DNA from: Haliotis cracherodii
Taxonomy: Eukaryota
NCBI RefSeq assembly: GCF_022045235.1
Contig: NW_027266264.1
Location: forward strand, 45,570,001 to 45,634,000
Direction of reading: 5' to 3'
DNA: 64,000 bases
The notes below the pieces were generated by a model. That model was given only the letters and a program-made list of their open reading frames with translations. It was not told where the DNA came from and did not search any database. Below are positions 24,901 to 64,000 of the stretch, piece after piece. The position numbers were made by a program, and so were the translations under genes. Numbering within the stretch: the stretch's first letter is position 1; each line of letters opens with the position of its first letter.

Positions 24901-24904
24901 GAAC

Positions 24905-28112: not shown

Positions 28113-28756
28113 CTTTGTGACTGCGGCAGTCAGCGTTGCTGCACACCCGTTTGTAGCCCGCCTCCTGCACCACTGTCGAGCTGCCACATGTAGCACAGAA
28201 GGAGTACCGATCATGCCAGGTTAGAATAGACCGAGCTTCAGCAAATATTCCAGCATGTCGGTCATCCATCTGCATAGTTAATGGAAACGGATTTGCAAAG
28301 AAGCCATCTTTGTGCACATCCTTCAGTTTGCTCTCTTCGACCCCTGTGACATCAACAGCAAACCACACAGCAGACTCAGGGTCCCAAGTTTCAAGCCCTA
28401 GGAATATGAGTAGAGGTTTCTTTGATATATGTTCTGCTAGCTGATTATAACTAAACAGACCTAGGACATATTTACTCTTCTTGGACTTTTGGTTTGTGTC
28501 CTCTATAAGAAAGGGATTCAGATCTGAGAAAAGGATGAACTTTGTGTTGTCCCTTCTGACAGCTTGGTGGATCCATTCTGGGTGTTTCCTCCGGTCAGAG
28601 GCTCTGTTAAGTGGGTTGAGGGAGTAGTAGTTCTGACACTCCTGGGTGGGAACGACAGCTCCGTCAGAGAGGGCGCTAGATGCATCGCTGTGGTTCCAGA
28701 AGTCGGCGATATCCAGAGCTGTCTGGCCAGATGAGTTGAGGACATTCATACTACAC
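28113..28756 (-). CDS. NUDT12: NUDT12 coding exon 3 (ankyrin, NUDIX-like, zinc ribbon)
   Basis: atag|...|gtgagt, phase 2/1. Motifs GQTALDIADFWNH, PLNRASDRRK, ARSILTWHDRYSFCATCGS..YKRVCSNADC. Confidence 0.95.
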
Positions 28757-40973: not shown

Positions 40974-42459
40974 CTGAACAACAAAAGTTCCTGTGCCATT
41001 GAATAAGACTTAATGCAAAGTTATGTTTTTTACCAAATCTGAAACGGTTTGCAACAGATAAAAGACTCCTGTTAGTGTTCAAATGGTTTAATTTGCCATA
41101 CTGACTTCAGAAAATGCGTGATTTCATGAACATGCCAAAATGTCAATTTACAAATCAATAGCAATGTGTCCACCTCTGGTTGCGATGCAAGCAACACATC
41201 TTCGTCTCATGGAATAGACCGGGCGTCGCATAAAGTCCTGTGGGATATCTGTCCATTTATGCTGGAGCATGTTTCGAAGTTCCTGGAGTGGCTGTGGAAT
41301 ACGTTGTTGACGTCGAAGGCGCTGATCCATCTCATCCCACATGTGCTCGATTGGTGAGAGATCAGGGGAGCGAGCCGGCCAGGGGATGACATTCACGTTG
41401 TTTTGTTGAAGAGAATCCTGAACAAGTCGTCCAATATGAGGCCGGGCGTTGTCATGTTGAAAGGTAATGCCTGGGCCATGACGACGCAAAAACGGTAGAA
41501 CAACAGGGCCGATGATCGCGTCGCGGTAGCGCTGTCCATTGAGATTTCCCTCTACCACTATCAAACGGGTCCTCTGTCTTGCTGTAATCCCACCCCATAC
41601 CATAACGCTGCCGCCGATTATCTTCCATGACACAATGATTGACGTAAAGTTCACCTCGACGTCGGTACACTCGAATCCGTCCACCACTGTGGCTGAGGTG
41701 AAAACGAGACTCGTCAGTGAATAGAACTTGTCCCCACTGCATGGCAGTCCAGCGTAGACGCTGTCTGCACCACTGTAGACGTGCTTGACGGTGGTTTCTT
41801 GTCAAAATGGGACGTCTGGCGGGTCTTCTGGCGACAATCCCTGCACATCTGAGGCGACGACTTGCGGTTTGTGAAGATATTCGTCGAAGGCCAGGGATGC
41901 TTTTTGCAGTCACGGTTGCTGGCTGGAATAGATTTCGTAGGTGTGTTGTTCGAATCCAGTTGTCTTGTCGATTATTGGTTACGCGTGACCTGCCACTCCG
42001 AGGATGGTCTCTGACTGCATTCGTCTGTTGCCAAAGTTGCCATAAACACCAAATGGTGTTTCTGTGGACGTTAAATTGTCTTGCAGCATCACGTTGACTC
42101 GATCCTGTTTCAAGCATACCAATGGCTCGCAGACGCTCATTTTTGGACAGGCGTGATATTTCGTAATGTTGAATAATTGTGTAATGTTGTTGTTTTTCTG
42201 AGTGGTTGTTGTCAGCACGATGCTAAACAATGCATATGGAATCCCGTTACCTCACATGTTTTTATACCCATTCTTGGGTAGTGAAATGCATGGGGCTTGC
42301 ATAGAAGTCAACTTTTGCATGGAATGCATGCTTTTCTGTAGAAGTTGCGTTTTTGTGACTTGATTCCATACATGCATGTACTACAATATTGAAAACCAAA
42401 CTTTACTTGTTTGAAAAATACACTTAACGATTGGTATCACAGGAACTTTTGTTGTTGAG
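40974..42459 (-). mobile_element. Tc1 transposon, full length, transposase frameshifted
   Basis: ta|ctgaacaacaaaagttcctgtg ... cacaggaacttttgttgttgag|ta. Motifs VLFTDESRF, FQHDNARPH and SPDLSPIEHMW are split over two frames. Confidence 0.93.
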
Positions 42460-44129
42460 TATATATATACACTATTGGACAACAATAGACAGACAAAGAG
42501 ACAATGGCGTTACCCTGGACATGGGACTTATTGATGTGATAACAGACACGGCCCAGGGGGGAATAGATTAAGGCTATGAATGTCTTAATGTGAAATGCTG
42601 TGTTAAGACAATGGTACAACTGACTGCTGTTACGCATGGATAACATCATGTTAAATAGACCAGTAGTCCAAATTTCCTAAACGATATGTACTCAACACTG
42701 TACAAAAGGGATGTAGTTCAGAAGCTATAATTCTGTAACATTGCGTTGTCCAGAGTACAGTTAAGTCACTCTGTGATACAATCAATCAGCCCTAGCTTTA
42801 CGATCACTAGGGTTTAGTGGCTAATATAGAATCTATAGCGGCTCTTTATACCCTTCAAACAAAAATGTCGAAAAAGCAGGATGGAATGATTTAGTGTCGA
42901 ATATGTTGGCTACTGGAAACTGTCCTGGAACATTCATACAAGCCACTTTCACCCGCTACGTATATTCAGTATTGATTCAAAAGTGGAATCACTCTTGTGG
43001 CGTCACTATACCCATGCTTATTCCTCCCTCGTTCCATCCTGTGATACACATTATCCTAACAGTGTTCCCTACCACGCTTTTCTGTCACTAAATCACACGA
43101 CAAATTATTTAATACCATGTCATTCATGCGTATCGGCGAGTTCGACGTCTGACGCTTGGAACCGTTTTCAGTTCGCGCCACATCGGCTCATTCCTCACCA
43201 TCGGCATCGGGATCACTCGTAAGCGTCCGTAGACTTAAGTCGCGACATTCCATCGTCACCACTCACCCCTTTCCGTGACCTGCATGAGGACCCATCCTCC
43301 TAGAGATGAATGCGGAAATACGACAAACCAATCAGAATACGCGTATGGCTTCAAATTCTTCGATCAAAGAAAACCTCAGGAATAATTTTATATTTTATAT
43401 ATGTCTTGCATCTAAAAATTTACCTAAGATAAAGTTAAAAGTTATAACTGTATAATACCGCATGTCCCGATGTGAATATTTATTTTCATTCACTCATTTT
43501 AGATTCAAACTGAGTTCAAGCACGTGTAGCGCCGTCATTTCCGGCCACCCTTTTCTTGTTTACCTCGGCGGCGAAGTTTAGGGTTGAGATTTGATGTGGT
43601 TTTTAAAAAAAATAAATACGAGGTAAGATGACCACAGATTAACACGATTGTGTAGCCTATGGTTTGTTTAGCGTGCCAATAGGTTGAAATAAGTGACATT
43701 CATATTCCAAGCTGAGCTGTGATTCGAACCCAGTGCGAAATATTGAATAAGGATCAAGATGGCCGGTGTCACTCCTTGTCTGTATGTATATAGAGGGGTG
43801 TTTTTTTGTTCTATACGAATATATACTAGCCACATTAAGAAACTGTGCACGGAGAAAATATAGATATAAGGGCTTACCGTCCATATATGAAATATAGGTT
43901 TGAACACAGCAATTATTAGAGACATTTAAACGCTCATGCACGTGCCATGCGATATGACGTCATTGATGGGGGCCTTTGGACGTGCAATGTGTTACTGCAC
44001 GTGCATCCTGTGCAGCTGTACACAGCATGTGCAACTCAATATTCGCTGTCACTTTGGAAAGCATGATCTGTGGTCATTCAAAAATTCAAAACTTTTCAGC
44101 CGCAGACACAAGCATATCACAAGCAAATC

Positions 44130-45143
44130 ATGCCAAGATTAACAGCTGCACAGCGCCATGAAGCCATTGGAATGATCCGAGCGGGAATGAGGCAACAACA
44201 GGTGGCAACACATTTCCAATGCCATCGTAACACGATATCGGCATTGGTGAGGCGTTATCAGAACACAAATGACGTTGCCGACCAACCACGTTCAGGACGT
44301 CCCCGAGTAACGACGCCAAGACAGGACAGATGGATTCGAGTTACACATCTCCGACACAGGTTCCAAACGGCAGTAACGACGTCCCGGACAATTTCTGGAC
44401 TGCGCCGTATCCATCCCAACACTGTCAGGAATCGTTTACGTCAGTACGGGATTCGACCACGACGCCCTGCCATACGTCCCATCCTGACACACCGTCATCG
44501 AGTCAACCGTCTAAGATGGTGTCGAAATCATGTTCGCCAACCTCGAATATGGTGGAGAAATGTTGTCTTTACAGATGAATCGAGGTTCAACATTTCCCAC
44601 AGTGACGGACGCCAACGTGTCTACCGGCGTTTGGGAGAACGTTATGCACGCAACTATATTGTGGAGAGGAATCGTTTTGGAGGTGGCTCTGTGATGATTT
44701 GGGGTGGGATAACAGCACGGCACCGAACCCCTTTGGTGGTTGTTCAGGGCAATCTCACCGGTGTTGGCTACAGAGATCAGATTCTGAGGCCTGTGGTCAT
44801 TCCTTTCCTGCAACGTCATGGCTGGGGATTGACATTTCAACAGGACAACGCTCGTCCTCACACGGCTAGGGTCGCAATGGATTTCCTTCACCATAACAAT
44901 GTCATGTTACTTCCATGGCCTGCAATTTCTCCAGATCTCTCCCCAATAGAGCATGTGTGGGATGAAATGGAGCGCCGTCTGCGTCGTCTTCCACATCCTC
45001 CAGATAACGTCCGTGACTTGGCACAGGATTTGAGGAGGATATGGCAGGCCATTCCCCAGGCCTTCCATGCCCATTTGGTGGACTCCATGCGTCGCCGATG
45101 CACTGCTGTGATTCACGCACAGGGTGGTCATACCCGTTATTGA
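44130..45143 (+). CDS. Tc1 DD34E transposase, intact ORF (337 aa)
   Basis: MPRLTAAQRHEAIG paired-like HTH, PRSGRPR, VFTDESRF, FQQDNARPH, SPDLSPIEHVW. There are 34 residues between the second D and the E. Confidence 0.95.
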   Translation: MPRLTAAQRHEAIGMIRAGMRQQQVATHFQCHRNTISALVRRYQNTNDVADQPRSGRPRVTTPRQDRWIRVTHLRHRFQTAVTTSRTISGLRRIHPNTVRNRLRQYGIRPRRPAIRPILTHRHRVNRLRWCRNHVRQPRIWWRNVVFTDESRFNISHSDGRQRVYRRLGERYARNYIVERNRFGGGSVMIWGGITARHRTPLVVVQGNLTGVGYRDQILRPVVIPFLQRHGWGLTFQQDNARPHTARVAMDFLHHNNVMLLPWPAISPDLSPIEHVWDEMERRLRRLPHPPDNVRDLAQDLRRIWQAIPQAFHAHLVDSMRRRCTAVIHAQGGHTRY

Positions 45144-47644: not shown

Positions 47645-47885
47645 CGGTCCGTGAAAATCCAGGTTAGAATAGATCTTCAGAAACCCATCGCTTGTCGTAA
47701 GAGACATCTCATGGGGTTGGGTGGTCAGGCCCGCTGACATGGTTGATGTATGACATCGCATCCCAAGTGCGTAGATCAATGCTTATGATGTCAATCAATA
47801 GATTGTTTCATTCAGGCTCGATTATTTACAGACCGCCATCATATAGCTGGAATATTGCTGAACAAACAAACAAACAAACAAACAC
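47645..47885 (+). mobile_element. SINE-like element with (AAAC)n tail
   Basis: Same family as 57312-57562 (ccgtgaa..tcttcag..cttgtcgtaagag..ctcgattatttacagaccgcc). Confidence 0.85.
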
Positions 47886-49146
47886 AAGCATCTGTAGGCG
47901 TTGATTACAGTGTATGAATTCTTTTCTTGGTGAACACCTTTTCATAGCACACCTTAACCAAACTGTTCAGAGAATTCATAACAATTTAGGTGGGTACATT
48001 TGGTTCAGTCATGTCATGCAATTTGTTGCATCCCTTACCATTGCCAGGTTCTTCTGTTTCGGGTTTGAAACCTGGATTGGCCCTGATTGTGCACTTCTAA
48101 AGCTTTCACAAATGAGATGATCCAAATGCCAGAGCAAGATAATTGTGTTTAGATTTCCACAAACCTATCTTCCTGTGTCGTACCTTATTAATTTTCTAAA
48201 TTTGTTTCAGAGTGGCATTGTCTCTGTTAGCGGACATACTACAACACGGCCAGAGCTTGGTGGACCAAGTACTCTTTCAACTGTTTTGATTGGACCATCT
48301 CGAGGTAAAGTAACGTTTTTCTTTGTTTATTTGCATCTAACATTTTGCACAATTATTTCTATATTTTTAACTTCTATTACATTAAAAAAAAATTCCCAAA
48401 GTACCTGTAAACAAAAAAAAAACCATTCAGATTTAACATGTCATTAAGTTATAGTGGCCTTAGACTGCTGTTGTATCTTTTAAATTGTAATGACAACTCA
48501 AACTGCTATGGTTGACTAAAAAAATACTCCTGGTTTTCAGTCACAACCGCATCATGATAAAGTCTGCAGAACATTTCGGGGGTTTTTTTTCCATAAAAAA
48601 ACATCAGTTAATATTCTGTGTCTCGAACACAAACCTCAGCAGTGAAATATTGCAATACTAGGATAAACCTGATAAAATAGAGTGCAGAGTTACTTCTCTT
48701 TACATCATGTCACATGAGCACTGATCTATTGCACATCTCCTGTTTGGATCATGGTGGCAGATTCTGAGGAGTTTGTGTGCTTGTTTTGCCATTTGCAAAT
48801 TTTCAGGAAAATCACTGGAGATAATAATTTAATATTTATATATTTACTGTATGCTAGGCATTGTTTTAGATAATGAGATTAATATTACTGTGTGTAATTG
48901 TCTCTTAAAAAAATAAGCCTGAAATAGCAATCAGCTGTACATCCCACATTTTCTTCCTTATCTATCAGTTATTCACTTTAAAAAATACCCAAAATCATAA
49001 CTGAGAATAATTTGTAATGCTGTGATAGAAATACATTGTGTCTCTAACTCCTCATGTTCATTTTAAGGGGTCAGTAGAGTTATTGTAAATAATGGTGAGT
49101 TTAGTGCGATCTGCTGATCAGTTTACACCATCTTTCCTAGGCAAGG

Positions 49147-49397
49147 GAGTTAACTTACTTTAAAAGTCCAGCTTCCACCCTTGCCAAACTAGGCCTTGAA
49201 ATTCTAAGTTATGTTTTGGCTGGACTACGAGTCTATGCATAGTCCAATCAAAATTGCATTACATAATCGACATGTGGTTCGTAAACTGCTGTTAAGATTG
49301 CTGTTTGGGAGGGACATAGAAGGGACATAACTCTTAAAAGCAAATTCCAACCTAGTTTGGCAAGGATGGAAACTGGGCTTTTATAGTCCGTTAACTC
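49147..49397. mobile_element. MITE-like inverted repeat element with GAG...CTC ends
   Basis: gagttaacttacttttaaaagtccagcttccacccttgccaaactagg is mirrored by cctagtttggcaaggatggaaactgggcttttatagtccgttaactc. Confidence 0.75.
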
Positions 49398-52300
49398 AAA
49401 AAGTTGAGTTCAATCACGATTTTGCCGAAATTAATATAAACAATATTTAATGATATCTTCGATTAAGTTAATATAATAGATAACAAACAAACTACTGTCA
49501 CAAGCCTAATTATAAACATAATGCTGAGTGTTGCGTTGAGACAAAAACATGACATGATTCAATTCTATATACATATGATTATTTTTCAATTTGCAGATCC
49601 TGTATTGGAGACTCTAAATAAATGTAACAGAGTCATGCTTTTCTCTGCTATAATGGATTCAGACCTTTTTAACAGCAGCTTTGTCTCCAAAACCCGTAGA
49701 CAACTCCCTGAAATGGAAAGAAAAGTCTTAGACCTAGCTGCGGCTACAGATATTGTACAAGGCATTTTCTACTCCATTGCCTTTACACAGGGAAGTCAGA
49801 TGTTTGTGTCCTATTTTGAAAGTGGATGCTTCTCTGGAATCATGCCATCCATTTCCAATGTTCTTCAGGAATCGGATTCAACAGTCACTCAACTTTTACC
49901 ATATAGGTGGTGATGTTAAGTATTAGTAATGTCTGTCCTTCAATACAGTTATCATAGTATGGATTCATACCAATTTCATGAAGTCAGAAAATTATTATTA
50001 TCTATCTGTATAGCATTTAGCAGTCTGCAACTTTAGCCACTAGTTGGAAGCCCAAGGCTAGTAAAATTCTGTTTGGTCTATTAAACGCAGTTAAGAATAG
50101 TCCATATAACAACACTACATTCTACTGAAAATGATCCTAAGAGCCGACCTCAGACTAGTACCAGTAGTAGTCTTAGCAGTTTTTGGAGACTGATTATGTG
50201 TTACTTTACTAGCCTATATAGCACGAGTGGTGCAGCCCTGAATATAATACATTTATGAATTATGCACATTATATCTTTTTTGTCCTAAGAATACTCGCCC
50301 GCAAAGACTTGAACAAGAAAGTTCTACAGCAGCAAAAGGCAGCACTCTCTCGAAGCAAAAGCCATGTGAAACAGAATGGGCATACTGATGGTAATGTATA
50401 TAGATAAATATATTGTGCTGTAAAAGGTAGCAGTTTAAATGGCATGTTGACAATCTTTGATATATTGGAAGCATTTTATTGAGCATTGTAATTTGGTACA
50501 TATTCTCAATTTGAATTTAATTCTGGTTCCTTTGTCAGCCAGTTTTCCATGTATGAATCAATTTGTATTTTATTGGACATATATGTGCAGTAATGATATA
50601 AGTTGTGTGGAAACCTCTGTTACCTTTGTTGCATTTTCTTGTTCACCGAGTAAAACCTTTTTGATCAGTATATTTTGAGACTACGAGCCCAAACTTGGTT
50701 CTTAGCATCATATTCAGTATATTTTAGTGTTATCATATGGCATTACTAGACCAAAGAGACTTTTTAAAAACCTGGGCTTCCCACTAGTGGCTAAAGCATT
50801 GAATTCTACATACCACTGCTCGAGTCCTGTAGTCCTTTGCAGTACTGCCCATTAGTTAAGGTATTATACGTACCAGTAGAAATTTACCCTTTTTAAGGGT
50901 TCTGCTGTATGTTATCATTATAAGGACAAGTGTACTAAAACTGTTAGTTTCTATTGCTGGTATGGCACTCCAATGTGTCAAGCCCTGAGTAATCTGTGGA
51001 GTAGCTGTATTGAACTCAAAGTATGTTGACATTCATCATGTTCATCTCTTATTATGCACATACCACTACCTTAACAGCAGTTGTTATGATTGCATACTTT
51101 AGATTTTCTTTGTAAGTATGTTTATTTTCATTGTGATCATAGTCATAGTTGCTCACATTTAATGATATACCCAGTAGTTTGCTTTTGTTAGTTACATCTT
51201 ATATTAGTCTAATTTCCATACGTTTCATCACTATGTTATGTTTTATTTCTGTTACTAAAGACCACAGTGGACAATACATTTTCTACGAAATGTTATTCTC
51301 ATTTGGTGCCATCTATGTCAAATAATTTATATGAATTTATACATGAGAGGACAAGTATTGAAAAAGTAATTATTGTATATACCAACTTGGTTTGGAAAAA
51401 TAGCAATAACATTATTGTAATGTTTGATTAGGTTTGTTTAAGGCATCATCAGGTTTTTTCATTGTTTGTAATTTTCATGGGTTTCTTTCAGCCTTGTGTT
51501 TCTTTAAGTATAAACATAATAAAGTATAGTTGGCCATGAATATAATAAGAACAAATTAAACTTTTTAAAAACTTTTGTAGTTAATCAGCATGATCAGAGC
51601 AATGTTGTTGTTTTTCAGGACCCAAGAGACAATGCTACAGCCAGTATTTCAACAGCAGATGGAGTATATGCAAAGTAGTGTTTGATAAGTTGTCCATTCT
51701 TGCACAGTCTGAAGACATATCCAACAAGCGTCAGGTATCATCTGTGATTTTCCACTGTCAAGAAGAATGCAGATGAAATCACATACATGACCGGTGTAAC
51801 TTTATATACAAGTTCCATAGTTACAGTATAAATGTTTTTATCTTGGCAGTGCCACTATCAATCTCATTTCACAAATGCTAAACTTTGAAAGGCCATCATT
51901 ATGCATCCTCCTCCTGTTATGAATGTAACCAAATAGTCAATAAACAAAAGTCAGTGTTTGTTTTTAGCTCACCTGACTGATATTATCAAGTTTCATTTAC
52001 CACAAAGTTTGCTTATTTACAAACCGTCTCAATCTTGCTCACTCACTACTCCCTTCTTGGGGTGAAACCGCACATTGGTGCATCGATGCATCGTCATTTT
52101 TTTGTATCAATACAAGACGATATCGACACTTGATAAAATTAATTACTTACTGCTCGTTTGATGACACCAAGCATTTTTGTCAGTCAAATATAGCGAAATG
52201 TGTTGTAATTAGGGTTTCAAGTTCACTACTAAAAATAGCCGCTGCAAAACATGTCTACAGCTATTTTGACCTTTTTATAGTCAAGAAGTTTCCACATGAT

Positions 52301-53847
52301 TTGAAGCAGTTCTACAATACGTATTGTATCGTGATCTTGCTGTTGTGTTTCACTGTACTCCCTTCACCTATGATAGTAACACATTTATTTGACTATTTTA
52401 ACAGGCCTCTACACATATTTGGGCTTCATGACACTGATACACTTTTGCAAGTTCTAAAGCATCACAGAATCCATGGAAACCACGTTATAGATGACCCTGT
52501 GGACTTCAGCAGCTTGAAAAAAGAAATAAAACCCAAAAGTGTTGAAGAAGAGTTCCACATTTTGTCATCAGTATCAAACTATCACTGGTACAATGACCAA
52601 AAAGCGAGCTACATGCAGTACTTTTCTACATACAATGAAGACACAAGGAAGTACCCTGCCTTTTTTTAAGAAATAAAATCATATTTCACTTCTGAATTGG
52701 ATGTCAAGAAAAGTAAAGTCAAAGTGTGAAGATGCTTTCTGCTCAACATGCTCAGGGAACAGTGAAGACTCCACTCACTCATCACAGACTACATCCATGC
52801 AGCCTCCACAGAAACGAAGATGAATTGCAAACCATGTGACATCAGACAACTTTGCCCATTCTCTCAACCTACACGAAGACATAGTCACTTCTAATGTTGC
52901 TCAACCATCATTGCTGTTTGACAACTTCTCAACTTCTCATTGAAGGTGGCACTATTCTCTGGCAATCTCATTTCTTTACAAAGGATGTGTTGATTATGAG
53001 TGACTATTGTCCTGAAAGTGGAAAGTTCAAGCCCCAGTCATACTGCAAAGTGACAATGCTTCATGAGGAGGAGGATACAACACATCTCCAGTGTTCTTGT
53101 TCTGTTTACAAGATGTCATGTTAACGAAAGTTACATTGAAAATGACAACACAGAAGAAACATATCTAGACACATCAGGTGTTACATGCATGCATGCCCGA
53201 TTTGTGAAAGAGTATTTACTGCAAGATTATCACAATCTCTTCAGTTCAGAATTTCAACCTGAATCTGACAAAGATAAAAAGTTAAGGGATTCAATGTTAG
53301 TGCAAAATCATGAAATAGTGCTGGTTGCAGAATCTCCTTGTGTAACCAAATATACAGTCAAAGGAAGAAATGAAAATGTTGAATTTGTACATGTCAACAA
53401 TGATACCTGGACTATTTCATGTCAATCAGGACTTTGTTCTGTTGGAAAATCTAAAACTGTAAAGAACTTAGAGGCATTCCAAAGGCTCTGTCCACATTTA
53501 TTGTCAATGAAAGAAAACCAACAACTCTGGATTCCTTCAACATCAACTGAGAACACTGAGGAACTAATGATCCCTTCTTCTTCTACCCCGGTACATTCAC
53601 TGAAAAGGTATGTTAAACCATGCAACAAAACCTTCGTTTGTATCTTATAATTAAAAGTACATGTAGGTATTGGGTCATGAGTATTCCGCCTGTCCTGGCT
53701 TTGTTATCAGCAAAATCTGAATCAAAGTTACTTCAAGATGTAATACCTATATATAGGGGTGGCTACTGGGTGTTATTTTCACTATTGTAGTTGTATTGTA
53801 ATAGTAGCCCGCACTATCATGACTATTGCAATAGTATTGTGATATGC

Positions 53848-54037
53848 ACCGTAAACAATGGGGAATTAAATTCTGGAAAAATATATCTGTCATACATAAA
53901 CATTTCCGGCTGTCAGCGTAAACCACGAAATTTATCTTTCAACTCTCCTTTTTTTTCACCAAAATAATATTCTAATAAGAGCCCCCAATTTCTAATTTTG
54001 AGAGCGCCTAGGCCGCTTATTACGTCGAATACGGTAT
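53848..54037. mobile_element. Partial copy of the 14119-14451 MITE
   Basis: aattaaattctggaaaaatatatctgt...gcttattacgtcgaatacggta. Confidence 0.85.
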
Positions 54038-57000
54038 TAATTTTTATGCATACTATTAACATTACCAAGGTGTTTTTAGTTTCCTGTCGATATAGAGCAA
54101 ATAACTGCAATAGTTTTATAGTTTGATATACCAGTACCGGTATTGTAAAATTACTATCGTAATTGGTTCATTATTTACTGATTGATACATTTTTGTGGTT
54201 TGTTGTTAAATTCAGATCTGATGCATCCATTCTTCTTAGTATTAATAAACATAATATGTCAAATACTGATAAATACTGTTCAGGAACATATGGTTGAAAA
54301 AAGGCACATTTCTTTCCATTTAGTCAAAATTGCTGATTTTATCCTTGGAATTGTTTCCTTTTAACATGTTCATAAAACTGTTATTGCTAATGTTTGCACT
54401 TTCATCACAAGTCAAACTTGAATGTCGACACTGGCTTCTGGGACTTTGGATCACTGAGTAAACATATTCCAACTGCTCAGAGTTGCCCAAAATACAGGGA
54501 GTAAGTAGTATCTTTATCTTTAATTGCTCTGCTGTGTGAACTATTTGTGTATAGATTTCATATAGTCTGACAACAAAACACTGCAATGGAACTATCTAAA
54601 TTCAAATGTAAGCTATTGAAGTCAATGCTTATTATTCATGTTTCCTAACATTAAAACATGTCAAGTGCACATTGTTTCCTCCACTGCTCTTTGTTAAAAT
54701 GTTGTGTATCATATTGTATTTTAAGGGATTAATTAGGACATATCTTGTTGTATTTCAGAAATACTGGTTTTGTCAGTATTATCTTGCTTTGTCCTGCACT
54801 ACCAGAAAACTGTTCATGTGGGGTATGTATGAATTTCCAAGCACAGTATGTCCAGTTTGCTTTATCGCTGATAGCCATAGGGACTGGAGGGATTTATCCA
54901 CACCTGCTCAAATTGACTTGAATGCCATATATGTATAATCTTATGATGGATCATAATTTAAGTAATTTTAGAAAAATGCTAATTTTTAACCAAACGATTA
55001 AATAAATCCTAATTTGCCTGCCAGGGGCACATGGTTAAGAATCAGCTTAAAAAACTACCTGACAGTTGCAGGTCATTTTGACTTTTTGTAACCTTATCAA
55101 ACAGAACTTTGTTACCAAAAGGTCACTCTGACAGCCTTTGCTTTCAGTTCATGTCTGATGTTGTCCAATCACAAGATGTTGGCATATATATATATTTTAG
55201 ATCCATTTACAAGATTAAGGATGACTGGAAGAATGTATACTGTAGGGGTCAGATAATGCTCAAAATGTACTGAGGACAATCCATGAATTTACAGGTCCAA
55301 TTCATATGTTACTACTGGTCCTTGTTGCGTTATCAATCATGCACCAAGCTTTAATCTTTTTTCAGTGCACCTTCCATGATGTACAAACACCAGATGGCAT
55401 TAACCTACTACAGCAGCACAGCACGAAAACAACACTTTACACCCGACTAGCCCCTATTATGGCAAATGTTTGCTGTATTATACAGAGGAAGAGGACAGTA
55501 TTCCTTTTTGGAGGAAGAAACCACCACTGTTGATGAACTGTCATGACTTTTTGTATAGAATTACAAGCTTTTCAAGTGACAGTGTCACATTCACTGGTTT
55601 CTGCAAAGAAATGGATCGTATATACAAGTCAAGACACATTGTCTCAGAGTACATTTAACAACTGTTTTTTTCTCCTGGGCAGCTAATATGAAGATTGACT
55701 TCAGGAAGATTGGAGATCCATTCTGTAAATCTTCCGAAGTACTTGCATGTGATGGAACCAGTCAGTTTTAGAGATGTCAAACTTATTCGGCCCGAAAAAC
55801 ATAATCTTTTGCAGAGTTCTTACACCTCACAATTTGCAGCTGAAATACATGTACATTATTTTCATAGTGTACCTTGCAGACTATGCAAAGAAATGCTTAC
55901 ATATTTACCTGCTTACCAGGATGCACATAGCATCCCTAAATCTTACAATCCAGAAAGTGGCGTGGCATATCATTTTACTGAAAGTGGAGAACAGGTTAGA
56001 AAACTCCCTATCTACAACCTAAATAAGATCAGCAAAACTAAAATTTATGATGACCTACCAGCAGCAGATGAAAGATGTAACAAGGACTTCCCTAGAGTCA
56101 GCACAAGTGGACGCAGTAGTTTGTTTTTCTGGTTTTGTTCCATTCATGGTCATTGTCTTGGGTTCCACATAATTCCTGAAAGTGAAGGCAGAAAAGATCC
56201 ATTTGCTTCCATGTTCAGGTACCTGCCTGAACCACCAACACATGTACTTTATGACTTTGCTTGTTCACTTTCTGAATACTGCTTGAATAGACAACCTTCA
56301 TTCTTTAAAGGCACTTGATTCTTCCATGATTATTTCCATGGTTGTACGCATGTATGTGGCGATGCTTTCAAGTCTTCAGTGTTTGAAAATGTGGGTGTCA
56401 ACACCGAAATCTGTGAGCAGTTCAATTCACAGTTCCTTACAAAATATCAAAGCAACTTCAACTCATTTGAGCCAGAGCAAGTTTTGTTTTCTTCTTCTTC
56501 TGGAGCAATCAAAATGGAATTAGAGAAAAACTGAAATGTTTTATCAACGATTGCATGTTGCTTTAGATGGTTCAAAGTAAAATGTGATGAATAGTACTCA
56601 CTAACATCAATGTTGCATGATACCGGTGATGTAGGACTGGCTCTAAGACTGTATATTAAAGTCGTTCAAGCCCAACTAGGTTACTCCGTGCATAAGAGGT
56701 TTTTCTAGGCACTTTGTTCTGTAATACTCTGCTGTAGATGAATGATATTTTTCCAGTTATATCTATGTTGTCATACTGCTTTCCTCAAACTTTTTACATT
56801 TATGGTTTATTTTGTTGTAGTTTGAACAGTGAAATGAGTCATACATAGATTTGTTTATTTGCTTTAATGTTAGTCTTAATAAAAAGATAAAACTTACAAA
56901 ATGTGTTTATTTATTTTGTTGAGAACACATATTACCTATCTGTGTAACAAAAGTATTCATTCAACAATAATACCACCAGTCAAATACTAAAGAATCTTGC

Positions 57001-57159
57001 AACAATACAGCACACAAACAACTTCAAACAAGTAAAAAGTAAATGAGTTATTACATGAAACTCAATGAATATATTAAAAAATGCATCTTAACAAAGCCAA
57101 TAATAGGAACATGCGGGTATGGTGTTGTGTCATACATGATATTAACCCCATTTGAATAC

Positions 57160-59445
57160 TGTAGACGTTATGGTTGGCCAACATACCCGCATCAGGAAGA
57201 GCTAGGGTTAGGTTATATATGTCAAGTCTGATGCCGCCACAGATATGTAACAGCCCTATTTGGATACTTACTGCAGACGTTTGGTTCGCCATCATGCCAA
57301 TCGGCCGCATCGGGTTGGTTGGTTGGTTTGTTGTTTAACGCCGCACTCAGCTATATTCCAGCTATATGACGGCGGTCTGTAAATAATCGAGTCTGGACCA
57401 GACAATCCAGTAATTGACATCATGAGCATCGATCCACACAATTGGGATCGATGACATGTATTAACCAAGTCAGCGAGCCTGACCACCGGATCCCGTTAGT
57501 CGCCTTTTACGGCAAGCATGGGTTGCTGAAGACCTATTCTACCCCGGAATCTTCACGGGTCTGGCCGCATCAGGAAGAGCAAGGGTTAGGTTATATATGT
57601 CAAGTCTGATGCCGCCACAGGTATTTAACAACCCTATTTGGATACTGCAGACGTTATGGTTCGCCATCATACCGTTCGGTCGCATCAGGAAGAGCTAGGG
57701 TTAGGTTATATATGTCAAGTCTGATGCCGCCACAGATATGTAACAGCCCTATTTGGGTTAAGGTTTCTACCCAATATATGCCTGACAGTGATTTACAACT
57801 GGGTTATTCCTAAATACAGACGCTGATGTTCTCGTATCTCAACATAAACATGAATCATGAGGTTCTATGGTTAGGTTTTCTACCCAATATATGTCCGACA
57901 GTGATGTAAAACTGGGTTATTCCCGATACAGACGCTGATATCACGAAATCTCAACAGAAACACGAATGATAAGGCGCTAGGGTTAGGGTTTTTACTCAAT
58001 ATATGCCCGGCACTGATGTAAAATTGGATTATTCTTGAATCAGACGCAGTTTTCGTATCTCAACAGAAACACGAATGATAAGGTGCTAGGGTTAGGGTTT
58101 CTACTCAATATATGTCCGGCACTGATGTAAAACTGGATTATTCTTGAATCAGACGCAGATGTCACGAAATTTCAACAGAAACATGAATGATAAGGTGCTA
58201 GGGTTAGGGTTTCTACTCAATATATGTCCGACAGTGATGTAAAACTGGGTTATTCCCGATACAGACGCTGATATCACGAAATCTCAACAGAAACACGAAT
58301 GATAAGGCGCTAGGGTTAGGGTTTCTACTCAATATATGTCCGACAGCGATGTAAAACTGGATTATTCTTGAATCAGGCGCAGATGTTTTCGTATCTCAAC
58401 AGAAACACGAATGATAAGGTGCTAGGGTTAGGGTTTCTACTCAATATGTGTCCAGCACTGATGTAAAATTTGATTATTCTTGAATCAGACGCAGATATCA
58501 CGAAATCTCAACAGAAACACGAATGATAAGGTGCTAGGGTTAGGGTTTCTACTCAATATATGTCCGACAGTGATGTAAAACTGGATTATCCTTGAATCAG
58601 ACGCAGATGTCACGAAATCTCAACAGAAACACGAATGATAAGGTGCTAGGGTTCGGGTTTCTACTCAATATGTGTCCGGCACTGATGTAAAATTTGATTA
58701 TTCTTGAATCAGACGCAGATATCACGAAATCTCAACAGAAACACGAATGATAAGGTGCTAGGGTTAGGGTTTCTACTCAATATATGTCCGACAGCGATGT
58801 AAAACTGGATTATTCTTGAATCAGGCGCAGATGTTTTCGTATCTCAACAGAAACATGCATTATAAGGTGCTAGGGTTAGGGTTTCTACCCATTATGTGTC
58901 CGACAGTGATGTAAAAGTGGGTTATTCCTAAATACAGACGCTGTTGTTATGAAATCTCAACAGAAACATGAATGGTAAGGTTCTAGGGTTAGGGTTTCTA
59001 CCCAGTATATGCCCGACAGTGATGTAAAACTGGATTATCCTTGAATCAGGCGCAGATGTTTTCGTATCTCAACAGAAACACGAATGATAAGGTGCTAGGG
59101 TTAGGGTTTCTACCCATTATATGTCCGACAGTGATGTAACACTGGATTATCCTTGAATCAGGCGCAGGTGTCACGAAATCTCAACAGAAACATACATGAT
59201 AAGGTGCTAGGGTTAGGGTTTCTACTCAATATGTGTCCGACAGTGATGTAAAAATGGATTTTTCTGGAATCAGACGCAGCTGTTGTGGTATCTCAAAAGA
59301 ACCCTCAGAAGAATCGTAAGGTTCTAAGGCTGGTGTTCCTTCCCAATATATGTCTTATTGTGTAGAAAACTGGGTCATTCCTGATACAGACACAGGTGTT
59401 ACTGTATCTCAACAGAAATATGAATCATGAGGTGCTAGGGTTACC
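57160..59445. repeat. Satellite array with a GCTAGGGTTAGG(G) motif: about 3 type-A units, then about 15 type-B units of ~112 bp
   Basis: gctagggttaggg anchors at 57976, 58085, 58197, 58309 and onward. Type-A units (57160-57760) share gctagggttagg..tatatgtc..tgatg. Confidence 0.95.
57312..57562 (-). mobile_element. SINE-like element with (AACC)n tail inserted in the satellite, 9-bp TSD
   Basis: ggccgcatc is duplicated at 57303-57311 and 57563-57571. Removing the insert restores a type-A unit. Confidence 0.9.
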
Positions 59446-60523
59446 CAACACATGCTGAAAAGTGACAAGAAACTGCTTTCTTAGTCACACAGATCCTACT
59501 TATTAATTTCTGTCTTTATGGTACTGCAATTATGCTTAAGTAGAGTGAGTGAAACTTGGGTGCACAGGTGGCCCAATTGTCATGGTTGATGGACCTTGAT
59601 GTGCAGTTAGTGCCAGGATGTCCTGGTCATGGGTTGAAATCGGGAATACAACCCTTCGTATCAGCACCACAATACCTCATGTGGTTGCATAGATCCGTGT
59701 CTCCCTTACAAATCACACTGCCACATGTCCATCTGTTCAGCTTAAGGTCACTATTCTCCAAACCAGTGATCAGAATGGATCCTCACATAACCAATCGACA
59801 CAACTTTGCAGTGTTGAAGCATTTTAGACCATTAGGCCAACTTTTCTCTCAAACAGCATAAAACATCCACACTATGGTGATGGAGACACAACTAGTATCA
59901 CATGTATTTCAATACTTTATTCTATTACAGAAATCCATTTTTTATACTTTATATAAATCAGTAGTGAAAACAAAAAACTTCTGAATAACATATTTGTGAA
60001 ACTTAAAGATTGTGTCAGTTATCTTCAACTTGCTGAATATGAACATTATTAACATTTGGTCATGACAATATTAGTGCTGGAATCAAGAGTGCAGCGTCCA
60101 GTTCATGACATCGTTAAAGGGGATATCTGAAACCACAAAAAAAAAAAACTGAACGAGTTAAATGGTATAATTTAAACATACTGATTATCATTTTATTCTT
60201 CTTATCTATAAGGCTACAATATTTGCCAAAGAAAGGTGAATGAATTTGGTAATGATAGCCCATAGCCTGGTTAAAAATAGTGCTACAACAGTGTAGCTCA
60301 CCTTCACATGTAGTCAACACTTTATAATGACCAAAAAGACAACCACTATACAGACACTATCATTGCTACCCTGCATATATATATTTTTATATTTTCCATA
60401 TAAATACTGAGGACTAAAAAACACTAAAATATCTGAACAAATCATGCTATCATCTTGAGGAGAAACGCACACGGCACAAATTCAGCTCCCTCAGTCTGGC
60501 AAATTTAGAGAAGTTTACATTGC

Positions 60524-60714
60524 CAAATATGCATTTTGATAGAATTTAAAAGCATGGTCAAAGCAAGGTCAAAATTATGAATTATGAAAAAACAGAAATA
60601 TTTTTTGAATCCCATAACATACACAAATATGCATTTTGATAGAATTTAAAAGCATGGTTAAAGCAAGGTCAAAATTATGAATTATGAAAAATCAGAAATA
60701 TTTTTTTAATCCCA
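60524..60714. repeat. 100-bp tandem duplication
   Basis: caaatatgcattttgatagaatttaaaagcatgg...aatccca occurs at 60524 and 60624. Confidence 0.9.
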
Positions 60715-62299
60715 AATTTCATTAGAACTTGTACAAAACTGACTGAATAATGGCAATAAGAAGTTTCAGCTAACAGTGTAGTTCAAGTGCAAAGATCATA
60801 CTGGAATTTGGATTTGAACGTCTTGAACAAATTCTGATGTGATCAACAAATGCGAAGTTTCAGCTTCAGTGGTCCAGTAGTTTCTGAGGAGGTGCTCACA
60901 ACAGATAACTCATCATTGTAGATTGACATGCAGACGATATCTCGAACCTGGACATTAAAATACTGTAAAATTTGCATTTAATCTCAAACCTCAAATGAAA
61001 TATTTCAAATATTTTACATTCACACATTTCTCTGCCTATTGATACAACAATTAGTGAAAGCACACTTTCAAGATTTATTATCTGGCATTGTGCTTAGCAA
61101 CTGCTACACTTTTGATCATTCCAACCCGATAAGTACATAGAAAGTTGCACGATCAAAAACATAAGTTCAAATATTTGAAGGCAAGTGTTTTAAGAAGCAC
61201 ATAGTATTTCAAATAAAAATATGACTAAACTTAATCAATTGCTTAACTCTTTCATCACTGGCTGCCCCAGAGTTATGTCCCTTGAAACCCTGCAGTCCCT
61301 GACACTGACAAGGCCTGTACACTGGCCTCCCTGGCAGTATTATTGGAAAATCACACCATCATTTTTGATGCACTTTTTCTACCAGAAACTTGCTTTTAAT
61401 ATACATTGATCATATACCATTGTAAAGAGGATTAAGTATACTTTAATATTCTTTGTTGTTATTGTCTCTAACCTTTGTCATTATCTAATTACAGGTGTTT
61501 ACAAGTGAAATAAAACTTGAAAACACTGAAAAAATGAAAACAGACAATGAATTTTGGCTCGAATTGTATTAAAAATCACAAAACTAAATCACAGATACAA
61601 GGTAAACATAACACAGTGGTCTTGTCATCTTGGACGGCACAGGTAATCGCAGGTGTTACAGGTAAATTCTCTTCATGCACATCTGTAAACAAATAAACAA
61701 GTTTACAACTCTTGGTACTGACTTTGTTTTCTATACTGATGTCACATATTACTTATGATACACCTACAGCCTCTTAGGTAAACTCGTTAACACAGGTAAA
61801 CTTGTTAACGCAGGTAAACTCGTTAACACAGGTAAAAACAAATATTTGATTTATTTTGTTCTTTTTCAGGATTTGAAACAAAAATTAAGTATTTAAGTTT
61901 TTAAAAAGTAATTTATCACATTACATGAACATTGAACCACAGCTACTATAAGAATGACATCACAGGGAAGATATCACAGATTGATCTGAAGAGGGAAAGA
62001 TTGTAAAAGGACAGAAAGATCGTAAATTCAAGTTCTGCAAATATAAAAGTTGTGATAACATATTTACAATACACTGCTATTTACAACTGCATAATAAATT
62101 AAATCAGTACTTTATTAAATCAATTGATAAATAAATAATTTATACAGTTACTAAAATTTAAATTAAGATGTAAAAAACAAGAGAACAAACATGATTATAG
62201 AAATAAATTTTATTCAAATTGTGCGAAATATAAGGACATACGACAAACCGGCAAACTACAATTCGGATTGCGATCAGAAAAATAAATTAAAAAAAAAAG

Positions 62300-63030
62300 A
62301 AACAAATACGTCATGCCACTCACCTTTGTTGTTGTTGTGATCGCTCATTCACGTGTAGGCTGCATTCTCATTCGTCGCACTGATAATCTGTTTAAACACA
62401 GAATCATTGTAAAACAGTTGGAAAAAATCAATAGCATGACTCTTCACTCACCGTACGTGTCAATATATATATATTCTTGAGTCCGGTCGCCTCTTCAAAA
62501 TCCCTCATGTCTCCACTGTTGTGGTCCCTCTGCCACTCCCATTCTTGAAAGTTGGCGGGGGGGACACCTCGTCGAAACCGTCAAAATCTTCACCAAAATA
62601 TTCGCGAAATTCCCTCTCCCCTTCGCTTAAATTATTCAATTCAAACACATTATTATTCCCGATAGAGTCGTTGTTAATCATCTGATCGCTATCCGAATCG
62701 TAGTTGGCCGCCATTACGCTTGATTTACGATTCAAGCGAGAAAAATACCTGTCGCGAAAACAGGTGACATCCGCGATTTTCGCGCCAAAAAGACGGGGAA
62801 ATTCCATAGAATGACGTGTCAATCACGTGTAGATCTCGTTTCCATATTTAGAACGAGATTACACACGAGAAAGGAAGTAGAAAGAGCGATTTTGTAAACA
62901 CGCTCGCGCCGCCCGATTTATCGGGCAGCCGGGTGTGGGGCTTGGACAGTTCTCGCCCGATTTTTCGGGCAGCCGGGTTCTGGGACACGGTTTATCCTGC
63001 CCGATAAATCGGGCAGTCGGGGCGAAAGGG
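62300..63030 (-). mobile_element. piggyBac-like 5' end with subterminal palindromic repeats; other end not located
   Basis: Minus strand TTAA|CCCTTTCG, and three gcccga(t/a)4tcgggcag units at 44-bp spacing. A short acidic ORF from ATG 62714 (YDSDSD..FGEDFDGFDE) resembles piggyBac transposase N-termini. Confidence 0.6.
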
Positions 63031-64000
63031 TTAAGTGATCTGACTAAGCCTGTAAAAGGTGCTAGAATCTTTTATGATAAATTAATATCAAATGAAAATA
63101 ATCTTAAAGGGGCACTGATCTAACGCAATTCCCTGGGACTGGTTGTTGCCTTTGTTATTGTTTTTCCCCAGTGAGTACCCGGATGTAGAGCAGAAATCTA
63201 GACTAGCTCGTGACCTCTGTTGCGCCATTCGTAAGCGCATTAGTCACTTTTATGGATACCGGTAGTAATAAGAGCGTATGGTCACATTGATCAACAAAAT
63301 GAAATACAGTTTCCGAGATAATAAGGAAATGTAGGCATCTTTGTGGGTAGCATCGGTAATGGTGACGAAGTTTTGATAAGTCACTTGCTTGTTAATTTTG
63401 CGATTTTCGTTTACACTATTTTGACTTGCAACACAAAGTAAATATTTCACCTGAGCATTGCTTTTTTTTTAGTGTGTATATTTTTTTCAAATGAAGGAAA
63501 ACAAAATGCAAATACCATAATTACAACTTACCAAATTTATCTGTATAAATAGGCAGCTTCCTTATTCGAGGAATGTATCCGTGAATATCCACACAAAGGA
63601 ATAATATCCCACTCGTCTGCAGCTATACAAAATAACTTATTCGATGTCACGTGTCTCTGTAACTATCAAATATTCTAAAAGATATATATCGTTTCGGGTG
63701 TCAAGTCTCAAGGGTCGGCTGAGAAAGGCCACGTGACAACTATTTTCATTACGTCGACGGTTCCTAAAAAATCCATTGAGTTTGATAACAATGAGCAACC
63801 AATCAACGTATTATCAGTTAACCCTTTGAACAAATTGTATGTTGTTTTTACATCGGCACTTCACGCCATGATATGAGTGTATTCCCTTTGTTTTAGTAAA
63901 CCTAGACATGTAAACACTCACTTTTGACATATCCACTGTGCAAGATAACAGTGATTAATCAATCAACGTATTTTCTGTTAATCCTTTGATGACTAGGAAC

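What the first reader, a model, noticed from the sequence alone, without database searches (positions are those of the whole stretch)
48211..56883. Multi-exon KDZ-class transposase gene with two SWIM-like fingers, hidden by introns and frameshifts
Seen: stitching frames gives an RNase H-fold-like acidic set, namely LACDGT (D at 55751, outside the ORF-track frame), LYDFAC, HDYFH..H.C and NTEICEQFNS. It is preceded by CSC-x(n)-CMH and C-x4-C-x(n)-CPH. Four upstream GT-AG exons join in frame, and AATAAA follows at 56878. Known: KDZ transposases of fungi, fish Zisupton and the domesticated gene HMGXB3 carry YD..C.L, D.FH...H.C and N....EQ motifs, and Zisupton proteins include SWIM fingers. Inference: this is a large intron-containing DNA transposon of a poorly catalogued animal lineage. 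From recall, its HxxCxGFH.IP..EGRxD block is closer to fungal KDZ-type proteins than to fish Zisupton. This copy is dead (stops at 56316 and 56521, several frameshifts).
Basis: partly seen in the sequence, partly recalled or inferred. Interest (0 to 1): 0.8.

Follow-up and report, generated by a model that had tools for sequence, protein, structure and literature searches.

The report
Dead Zisupton-type (KDZ) transposon copy
This stretch is the broken, multi-exon transposase gene of a very large cut-and-paste DNA transposon of the known KDZ/Zisupton kind in what other notes of this scan call an abalone genome; it is real but ordinary, one of about ten decayed copies.

Summary
They are far beyond chance. 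The 207-aa piece 55695-56315 has 980 relatives, the best at E 6e-52. The full-length relatives carry Pfam CxC4 plus KDZ.

A profile of ten full-length relatives tiles the window colinearly from 52517 to 56496, through five frame changes and two stops. Probable RNA contigs show GT-AG introns at 53608-54411 and 54823-55365, more upstream exons, and a poly(A) tail at 56901. Their alleles come from sister copies, not from this one.

The gene is only part of the thing. The repeat unit runs from 48092 past the window end, at least 27.6 kb. It contains the 112-bp TTAGGG-bearing satellite and nested repeats. This copy lacks both termini.

Other copies define imperfect terminal inverted repeats with the core GAACATGACAGTTAAAT. 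Two are complete (33 and 44 kb) and one is a 3.3-kb deletion derivative. One copy has a 6-bp flanking duplication.

All copies lack about 150 residues of a helical insert and are broken differently.

The architecture (SWIM-like fingers, CxC4, KDZ) fits Zisupton. I rate it a new member of a known kind, of modest interest.

The parts
48092..61246 (+). First block of the truncated transposon copy. The left breakpoint at 48092 lacks the leftmost ~1.86 kb, including the terminal inverted repeat.
   Evidence: Colinear at 92-98% identity with copies on C8 (two) and C34. Other copies continue 1.86 kb further left to a sharp common end.
50360..50390 (+). End of an upstream exon, with donor G|GTAATG. 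It joins 51619.
   Evidence: The loose-end text of RNA contigs at 51618 maps to 50360-50389.
51619..51792 (+). Upstream exon. Its 3' end is approximate.
   Evidence: Exon-like depth block with acceptor ..TTTTCAG. The joint to ~52404 carries 14 diverged letters.
52405..53607 (+). N-terminal coding region, frameshifted here. It has three coding pieces: 52517-52645 in frame 2 (profile 30-72), 52930-53115 in frame 1 (finger 1, CxC) and 53138-53545 in frame 2 (CxH of finger 1 and the whole of finger 2).
   Evidence: hmmsearch with the profile of ten relatives, alignment and RNA contigs. In copy C56 profile positions 23-225 are one open frame, so 52781-52905 is coding and not an intron.
53608..54411 (+). 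GT-AG intron. It holds a nested high-copy SINE-like repeat at 53838-54040.
   Evidence: Joint 53604>54409 (cut +3) in runs X15 and X17. The SINE has hundreds of genomic matches.
54412..54822 (+). Degenerate middle exon(s). Only 54409-54483 (frame 1, profile 427-451) is still recognisable, plus a small exon at ~54764-54822.
   Evidence: All three frames hold stops.
54823..55365 (+). GT-AG intron.
   Evidence: Joint 54821>55365 (cut +1) in runs X15, X16 and X17.
55366..56901 (+). Last exon. Its pieces in order:
- CxC4 tail, 55464-55646, frame 3.
- First catalytic Asp strand (LACDGT), 55658-55759, frame 2.
- Junction at ~55760-55766, where ~150 residues of the relatives are absent.
- KDZ core, 55767-56315, frame 3.
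- TGA at 56316.
- 56319-56438, frame 3, and 56428-56520, frame 1.
- TAG at 56521.
- AATAAA at 56878 and poly(A) site at 56901.
57314..57562 (-). SINE-like insertion private to this copy. It is the inverted partner of the SINE at 47649-47861, outside the copy.
   Evidence: Absent from the C8 copies. Inverted pair I1. Not a transposon terminus.
57755..59443 (+). 112-bp satellite array (TRF: 13.7 units over 57755-59283), whose unit starts GGGTTAGGGTTT. It is internal to the transposon.
   Evidence: Tandem Repeats Finder. The array is present at the same place in the C8a, C8b, C34 and C36 copies.
59444..61246 (+). Non-coding internal sequence of the element.
   Evidence: 92-98% identical to the other copies.
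61247..64000 (.). Foreign 3.4-kb insertion private to this copy, running to window-equivalent 64662. The element then resumes outside the window, at L023:663-8564 and beyond.
   Evidence: C8b is contiguous across this point. The element resumes for 7.9 kb at 97.7% identity and then to C1:45645680.

Best explanation
The interval holds the pseudogenised, multi-exon transposase gene of a Zisupton-type member of the KDZ (Kyakuja-Dileera-Zisupton) superfamily of cut-and-paste DNA transposons.

In intact relatives the roughly 1000-aa protein has four parts:
- an N-terminal region with two SWIM-like CxC/CxxxxC...CxH zinc fingers, presumed to bind DNA;
- a CxC4 cysteine cluster;
- an RNase H-like DDE catalytic domain, whose acidic residues sit in ACDGT (strand 1), FYDFAC (after strand 4) and ICEQ (a C-terminal helix);
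- a long helical insert between strands 1 and 2.

Such an enzyme would bind the element's roughly 23-29-bp imperfect terminal inverted repeats, cut the element out and paste it elsewhere, leaving a short target duplication.

The window copy cannot do this. It lacks both termini. Its reading frame is broken by five frame changes and two premature stops. Its middle exon is degenerate. Like every copy in this genome, it lacks about 150 residues of the helical insert.

Shown here: homology, colinearity, breaks, copy family, termini, splicing and polyadenylation of sister-copy transcripts. Inferred: catalytic roles of D/D/E, DNA binding by the fingers, and past mobilisation in trans.
For: Homology:
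- The piece 55695-56315 finds 43 proteins (best E 2.5e-49), many carrying PF18758.
- The exhaustive search finds 980 relatives.
- Full-length relatives carry CxC4 PF18717 plus KDZ PF18758.
- Their profile tiles 52517-56496 colinearly, with the KDZ core at E 8e-68.

Catalytic set:
- D112 and D431 are invariant and E485 is at least 90% conserved in 53 relatives.
- The AF2 model of relative P0044 has pLDDT 92.
- Its best structural matches are ISCth4 transposase (Z 9.4, 214 residues aligned), then about 30 integrase, Tn5, TnsB, Mu, piggyBac and Hermes cores at Z 6-7.7.

Fingers:
- C86, C88, C109, H111 and C187, C192, C210, H212 are at least 90% conserved.
- The model topology is strand-CxC then CxH at a helix start.
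- The best structural match is Shu2, a SWIM protein, and ZSWIM8 is also listed (weak).

Mobile element:
- About ten loci.
- A sharp left end with three different flanks.
- Inverted-repeat partners on C8, C34 and C78.
- A 3.3-kb derivative that keeps only the two arms.
- GGTATC on both sides of the C34 copy.

Decay:
- Each copy is broken differently.
- pN/pS between copies is about 0.6-1.6 on small counts.

Transcription:
- Exon-like depth, GT-AG joints and a poly(A) tail.

Literature:
- SWIM + CxC4 + KDZ is the canonical Zisupton layout (PMC11343200).
- Zisupton elements are multi-exonic and have mussel relatives (PMC9297572).
Against: - No window piece reaches a Pfam KDZ, CxC4 or SWIM hit on its own. 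Family membership is transitive through relatives.
- The structural Z scores (9.4 and 5.2) lie in the range the tool calls middling.
- The only flanking duplication seen is 6 bp, not the 8 bp reported for Zisupton, and a second complete copy shows none.
- All copies share nested repeats and the same ~150-residue gap. They therefore descend from one already altered master, and no intact source of transposase was found in this assembly.
- No tree with labelled Zisupton, Kyakuja and Dileera references was made.
Confidence: 0.88

Rival explanations
1. The copy family arose mainly by segmental duplication of one genomic region that contained an old KDZ relic, not by transposition.
For: - Copy number is low.
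- All large copies share the same nested SINE (53838-54040), the same 7.2-kb nested repeat, a second SINE and the same ~150-residue gap.
- Two copies lie 750 kb apart on one contig.
- No intact transposase was found in the assembly.
- One complete copy has no detectable target duplication.
Against: - Copies end at the same nucleotide with unrelated flanks.
- The two ends are inverted repeats of each other.
- A 3.3-kb derivative keeps exactly the two arms.
- The C34 copy is flanked by GGTATC on both sides, about 0.3% likely by chance.
- The copies lie on at least seven contigs.
Confidence: 0.07
2. It is a pseudogene copy of a domesticated, host-kept KDZ-derived gene. The spliced, polyadenylated transcripts seen in several species would come from that functional host gene.
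For: - Probable RNA contigs from four runs, labelled as four organisms, show the same exon structure at high depth.
- The ~150-residue gap is shared by every copy and transcript, as a fixed short form might be.
Against: - Every genomic copy found is broken.
- Transcript alleles in organism A match the broken C8a and C34 types.
- The transcripts of the other species carry a 125-nt deletion within coding sequence, between short direct repeats.
- The loci have inverted-repeat termini.
- pN/pS is near 1.
Confidence: 0.04
3. It is a KDZ element of the Kyakuja, Dileera or 'fungal-like' type rather than Zisupton.
For: - The left end starts CA.
- The duplication seen is not 8 bp.
- No labelled tree was made.
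Against: - Relatives carry CxC4, and a SWIM-like CxC..CxH finger lies upstream, which is the layout assigned to Zisupton (PMC11343200).
- Kyakuja is described with 7-bp duplications, CA..TG ends and no inverted repeats (PMC12730594). This family has inverted repeats, and its right end reads ..ACCCTC.
- The one named fungal hit is only 37% identical.
Confidence: 0.08

Closest known systems
Zisupton DNA transposons (first described in fish by Bohne et al. 2012; cited through PMC9297572 and PMC12730594)
   Same: - KDZ-type DDE transposase.
- Multi-exon gene.
- Protein of about 1000-1400 aa.
- SWIM-type finger plus CxC4 cluster.
- Terminal inverted repeats.
- Large element.
   Different: - The one flanking duplication seen here is 6 bp, not 8.
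- Complete copies are 33-44 kb with nested repeats and an internal 112-bp satellite.
- This lineage lacks about 150 residues of the helical insert between catalytic strands 1 and 2.
- No sequence comparison with a fish reference was possible here.
KDZx1 of Cryptococcus deneoformans (PMC11343200)
   Same: One protein with SWIM, CxC4 and KDZ domains, named there as the canonical Zisupton layout. Shown experimentally to move.
   Different: Fungal, 6.4 kb, with 8-bp duplications and no inverted repeats detected. The abalone family has clear inverted repeats, introns, is far larger, and is dead in all copies seen.
Uncharacterised CxC4+KDZ proteins of Mytilus spp., Argopecten irradians, Mactra antiquata and Lineus longissimus
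   Same: These are the named relatives; closer, unnamed ones exist. Identity to the window's KDZ core is 44-55% where measured (Mytilus-cluster P0067, Argopecten P0121, Mactra P0126); the Lineus protein was compared only with relative P0074. Same motif set, same order of domains, same two fingers.
   Different: They keep the full helical insert. Many unnamed members of the family are single open frames of about 1000 aa.
Zisupton-like genes of Pristionchus pacificus (PMC9297572)
   Same: Multi-exonic KDZ-domain genes that look like host genes, with inverted repeats.
   Different: The nematode families are recently active with dozens of intact copies. Here there are about ten decayed copies.

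Membership tests
KDZ transposase superfamily (Pfam PF18758) | Sequence homology to the KDZ transposase domain | tested here: met
   The window piece has no direct Pfam hit. Its relatives at E down to 6e-52 carry PF18758. The profile of ten full-length relatives matches 55767-56315 at E 8e-68.
KDZ transposase superfamily (Pfam PF18758) | Conserved acidic D, D, E set on an RNase H-like fold | tested here: met
   The residues are present in the window (D at 55751, the D of LYDFAC, the E of ICEQ). They are invariant or at least 90% conserved in relatives. A relative's model matches DDE transposase and integrase cores, best Z 9.4. Catalytic roles are inferred.
KDZ transposase superfamily (Pfam PF18758) | N-terminal CxC-type zinc-chelating cluster next to the transposase domain | tested here: inconclusive
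   CxC4 (PF18717) is found in 8 of 11 full-length relatives scanned. In the window only its tail (55464-55646, profile 539-598) and a short start (54409-54483) survive, and there is no direct Pfam hit.
KDZ transposase superfamily (Pfam PF18758) | Discrete element ends with terminal inverted repeats | tested here: met
   The left end reads CAGAAG-GAACATGACAGTTAAATGGAGC. The right end, reverse-complemented, reads GAGGGT-GAACATGACAGTTAAATAGAGC. Paired ends occur on C8, C34 and C78. The window copy itself has neither end.
Zisupton clade | SWIM finger upstream of CxC4 and KDZ | tested here: inconclusive
   The CxC-x(n)-CxH signature and a second C-x4-C-x(n)-CxH are at least 90% conserved in 60 relatives. 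The model topology fits. The best structural hit is the SWIM protein Shu2 at Z 5.2, and ZSWIM8 scores Z 3.9, both within noise. Neither the window pieces nor the eleven relatives scanned give a Pfam SWIM hit.
Zisupton clade | 8-bp target site duplication | tested here: inconclusive
   The C34 copy has GGTATC (6 bp) abutting both termini. The C8a copy has no exact 6- or 7-nt repeat of its left flank within about 12-14 nt of the right-end repeat core. No other copy had both flanks available.
Zisupton clade | Multi-exon transposase gene | tested here: met
   GT-AG joints, exon-like depth and a poly(A) tail in probable RNA contigs. The literature describes Zisupton as multi-exonic (PMC9297572).
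Zisupton clade | Phylogenetic placement with reference Zisupton rather than Kyakuja or Dileera transposases | not tested
   No labelled reference sequences could be obtained through the tools.
Kyakuja clade | 7-bp duplication, 5'-CA..TG-3' ends, no inverted repeats (PMC12730594) | tested here: not met
   Inverted repeats are present, the right end reads ..ACCCTC, and the duplication seen is 6 bp.
Domesticated KDZ-derived host gene (HMGXB3-like) | Single-copy, intact, syntenic gene without transposon termini | tested here: not met
   About ten loci, all broken, with inverted-repeat termini. Relation to HMGXB3 itself was not tested.

The most novel reading that the evidence does not exclude
The abalone lineage may keep a short form of the KDZ transposase gene that lacks most of the helical insert between catalytic strands 1 and 2, and that is still transcribed, spliced and polyadenylated in several species. 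If an intact copy exists outside this assembly, it would be either a still-active minimal KDZ enzyme or a domesticated one. Its 25-44-kb elements would also be vehicles that spread a TTAGGG-bearing 112-bp satellite array around the genome.
Probability: 0.1. Interest if true: 0.55.

Novelty: new member of a known kind. Interest (0 to 1): 0.3.

Why it matters
The result is mainly useful for annotation. A stretch that looks like a multi-exon host gene is a dead transposase gene. The neighbouring TTAGGG-bearing 112-bp satellite is cargo of the same transposon, not an independent telomere-like locus. The true unit is several times larger than the flagged interval.

It also adds a gastropod family with defined termini to the thinly characterised animal branch of KDZ/Zisupton elements. 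It records a possible 6-bp target duplication and a lineage-wide loss of part of the catalytic-domain insert. Both are worth checking if someone studies KDZ mechanisms, for which no solved structure was found by sequence or profile search.

Tried and rejected
- **Direct Pfam scan** of eight window ORF pieces: no KDZ, CxC or SWIM hit.
- **Sequence search against solved structures**, with the piece and with a 53-sequence profile: only designed helical proteins.
- **Foldseek against PDB**: nothing at E <= 0.001. VIA-align was needed.
- **The inverted repeat pair 47760-47861 / 57347-57448** brackets the flagged interval and could be mistaken for transposon termini. It is two copies of a high-copy SINE, one of them private to this copy.
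- **Boundaries at 48092 and 61246** first looked like element ends. They proved to be a truncation and a private 3.4-kb insertion.
- **The 7.2-kb multi-copy family as a non-autonomous derivative**: rejected. That family sits in the right part of the unit. It shares neither the left arm nor the left terminus, and it ends before the KDZ right arm resumes. It is a nested repeat.
- **Search for the right-hand repeat partner in the DNA I held at first**: failed, because two young insertions separated it.
- **Target duplication in the C8a copy**: not found.
- **Tool limits**: Flanks of most termini and the loci of intact relatives could therefore not be read.
- All searches were piece by piece, by reference.
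Full report
**1. Observation**

- LACDGT at 55742-55759 in frame 2, with the Asp codon at 55751.
- LYDFAC at 56247-56264, HDYFH..H.C from 56325 and NTEICEQFNS at 56400-56429, all in frame 3.
- The HGHCLGFHIIPESEGRKDP block.
- CSCS at 53092 in frame 1 and CMH at 53186 in frame 2.
- C-x4-C followed by CPH at 53489.
- TGA at 56316, TAG at 56521, and AATAAA at 56878.

None of the eight ORF pieces hits a Pfam family directly. The 207-aa piece 55695-56315 nevertheless finds 43 proteins in the word-indexed search (best E 2.5e-49, 61% identity), many carrying PF18758 KDZ. The exhaustive search finds 980 cluster representatives (358 at E <= 1e-10; best 6.4e-52 at 63% identity). This is far beyond chance.

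**2. The protein**

The long relatives (about 950-1340 aa) carry CxC4 (PF18717) and/or KDZ (PF18758). Named members come from Mytilus species, Mactra, Argopecten and the nemertean Lineus.

A profile of ten full-length relatives tiles the window in order:

| Window coordinates | Frame | Profile positions |
|---|---|---|
| 52517-52645 | 2 | 30-72 |
| 52930-53115 | 1 | 179-240 |
| 53138-53545 | 2 | 252-392 |
| 54409-54483 | 1 | 427-451 |
| 55464-55646 | 3 | 539-598 |
| 55658-55759 | 2 | 608-641 |
| 55767-56315 | 3 | 797-977 (E 8e-68) |
| 56319-56438 | 3 | 979-1018 |
| 56428-56496 | 1 | 1015-1037 |

So most of the frame changes between coding pieces are frameshifts of a decayed copy, not introns. 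Profile positions 641-797 are missing at about 55760-55766.

In 53 relatives the Asp of ACDGT and the Asp of FYDFAC are invariant, and the Glu of ICEQ is at least 90% conserved.

An AlphaFold model of relative P0044 (pLDDT 92) places these residues on strand 1, after strand 4 and on a C-terminal helix of an RNase H-like core. About 200 residues of helices are inserted between strands 1 and 2.

Foldseek found nothing significant. VIA-align ranks ISCth4 transposase first (Z 9.4, 214 residues), followed by about thirty integrase, Tn5, TnsB, Mu, IstA, piggyBac and Hermes cores at Z 6-7.7. The scores are middling, but the list is uniform. No solved structure is related by sequence.

**3. The fingers**

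C-x-C...C-x-H and C-x4-C...C-x-H are at least 90% conserved in 60 relatives.

The C34 copy keeps this region in one open frame of 227 aa. Its model (pLDDT 84) puts CxC at a strand end and CxH at a helix start, twice.

The best structural match is Shu2, a SWIM protein (Z 5.2), and ZSWIM8 also appears (Z 3.9). Both are within noise. No Pfam SWIM hit exists. 'SWIM-like' is therefore supported by pattern and topology only.

**4. Gene structure and transcription**

Four small runs that behave as RNA were laid on 51500-57100. They showed exon blocks at depth of tens (X19) to a few thousand against about 0-20 in most intron bins, and a poly(A) tail. They are labelled organisms A, C, D and E.

Exon blocks lie at 51618-51778, 52403-52759, 52906-53604, 54409-c.54480, c.54764-54821 and 55365-56901. 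There are clean GT..AG joints at 53604>54409 and 54821>55365. An upstream exon ends at 50390 and joins 51619. A run of A follows 56901, 18 nt after the end of AATAAA.

I could not test the in-frame joining of four upstream exons. I left the joined model out, and in this copy the exons hold stops.

The apparent skip 52759>52906 in organisms C, D and E is a 125-nt deletion between short direct repeats inside coding sequence, not an intron. Copy C56 reads profile positions 23-225 in one frame there.

Transcript alleles of organism A match the C8a and C34 copy types, not the window copy, which has many private changes. There is no evidence that the window copy itself is expressed.

**5. The element is much larger than the finding**

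The genome is 1.18 Gb in 80 contigs. Other notes of this scan call it black abalone, which I did not test.

It holds coding matches at seven loci and DNA matches at about ten.

Against the best copy (C8b, 96-98% identity) the window copy has the following layout, given in window-equivalent coordinates:
- It runs from 48092 to 61246.
- A private 3.4-kb insertion interrupts it at 61247-64662.
- It resumes for 7.9 kb to 72564.
- A young 1334-bp MULE-related element with an 8-bp duplication interrupts it at 72565-73898.
- It continues to about 75680.

The copy is therefore at least 27.6 kb.

The 112-bp satellite (57755-59443, unit starting GGGTTAGGGTTT) lies inside the unit in all large copies. 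The unit also contains a nested 7.2-kb non-coding repeat that has at least 15 separate copies at 87-92% identity, and two SINE-like repeats.

**6. Termini**

Copies C8a, C34 and C1b share a sharp left end, CAGAAGGAACATGACAGT.., with three unrelated flanks. The window copy lacks this leftmost 1.86 kb.

The right end of C8b reads ..ATTTAACTGTCATGTTCACCCTC. This is an inverted repeat of the left end over a 17-nt exact core, and over about 23 nt with two mismatches.

A pattern search finds paired ends at three places:
- C8:1144620/1177971, a 33-kb copy.
- C34:49174513/49218797, a 44-kb copy.
- C78:40830720/40834011, a 3.3-kb derivative made of the two arms only.

No right terminus was found for the window copy.

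The C34 copy has GGTATC directly outside both ends (about 0.3% by chance). C8a shows no such repeat. The duplication length is therefore tentatively 6 bp, on one case.

**7. State of the family**

Every copy is broken at different places. All lack profile positions of about 641-797/845, and so do the transcripts: contig X15-6 spans 55365-56837 with only +25 nt.

pN/pS between copies is about 0.6-1.6 on small counts.

The shared nested repeats and the shared gap imply that all copies descend from one altered master. How they were mobilised is open, because no intact transposase gene is in this assembly.

**8. Comparison with what is known**

- Zisupton is described as multi-exonic and has mussel relatives (PMC9297572).
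- SWIM + CxC4 + KDZ is called the canonical Zisupton layout (PMC11343200).
- Zisupton makes 8-bp duplications. Kyakuja makes 7-bp duplications, with CA..TG ends and no inverted repeats (PMC12730594).
- The KDZ domain is noted as expanded in an oyster (PMC10546077).

The family fits Zisupton by architecture. Kyakuja's defining features are not met. The 8-bp duplication is not confirmed. The HMGXB3 link was not tested.

**9. Limits**

- Own-genome searches ended.

**10. Verdict**

This is a real, well-supported dead copy of a known kind of transposon. It is useful for annotation and of modest novelty.

Noticed in passing
window 57755-59443 (also in the C8, C34 and C36 copies): The 112-bp satellite whose unit starts GGGTTAGGGTTT is an internal component of the KDZ transposon in every large copy. 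It is carried around with the element rather than being a local telomere-like array.
   Followed up: partly
L023:1406-8573 (window-equivalent about 65406-72573): A 7.2-kb non-coding repeat is nested in all large KDZ copies. It also exists as at least 15 separate copies at 87-92% identity on many contigs. It has no ORF over 111 aa and its type is unknown.
   Followed up: partly
L023:8565-9898 (C1:45642565-45643898): A young 1334-bp element with an 8-bp target duplication and a MULE-transposase ORF fragment (PF10551, E 9e-6). At least 40 copies of the 300 nt of it searched are 96-100% identical, which suggests recent activity.
   Followed up: partly
C8:405505-406368 (locus L024, inside copy C8b): A young 864-bp foldback-type element with about 170-bp inverted ends. 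About 40 copies at 96-99% identity were listed (the table is capped).
   Followed up: no
window 47649-47861, 53838-54040, 57314-57562: SINE-like repeats of about 200-250 bp with very many genomic copies. The one at 53838-54040 reaches contig depth of 10^4-10^5 in the probable RNA runs. The pair 47760-47861 / 57347-57448 is inverted and brackets the flagged interval.
   Followed up: partly
window 50031-50796: A MITE-like structure with 54-nt inverted arms (81% complementary). It contains the 3' end of the upstream exon that ends at 50390.
   Followed up: no
window 2660-6930 (+): A GC-rich (53-55%) DIRS-like retroelement. ORFs carry reverse transcriptase (PF00078, E 5e-19) and a tyrosine recombinase (phage-integrase families, E about 1e-4).
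   Followed up: partly
window 44070-45143 (+) and 41148-42117 (-): Two Tc1/mariner-type transposase genes. The first is an uninterrupted 357-aa ORF with HTH and DDE_3 domains. The second is split.
   Followed up: partly
window 22221-24908 (-) and 35133-36845 (-): LINE-type endonuclease and reverse-transcriptase ORF remnants.
   Followed up: partly
window 28105-28791 (-): The only clear host exon seen. It is NUDT12-like, with an ankyrin end, a NADH pyrophosphatase NUDIX-like domain and a zinc ribbon.
   Followed up: partly
window 11725-13100: A minisatellite that reads open in several frames on both strands (repeated 'TIEHCKVVHSPVCVHQI..' units). It is probably non-coding.
   Followed up: no
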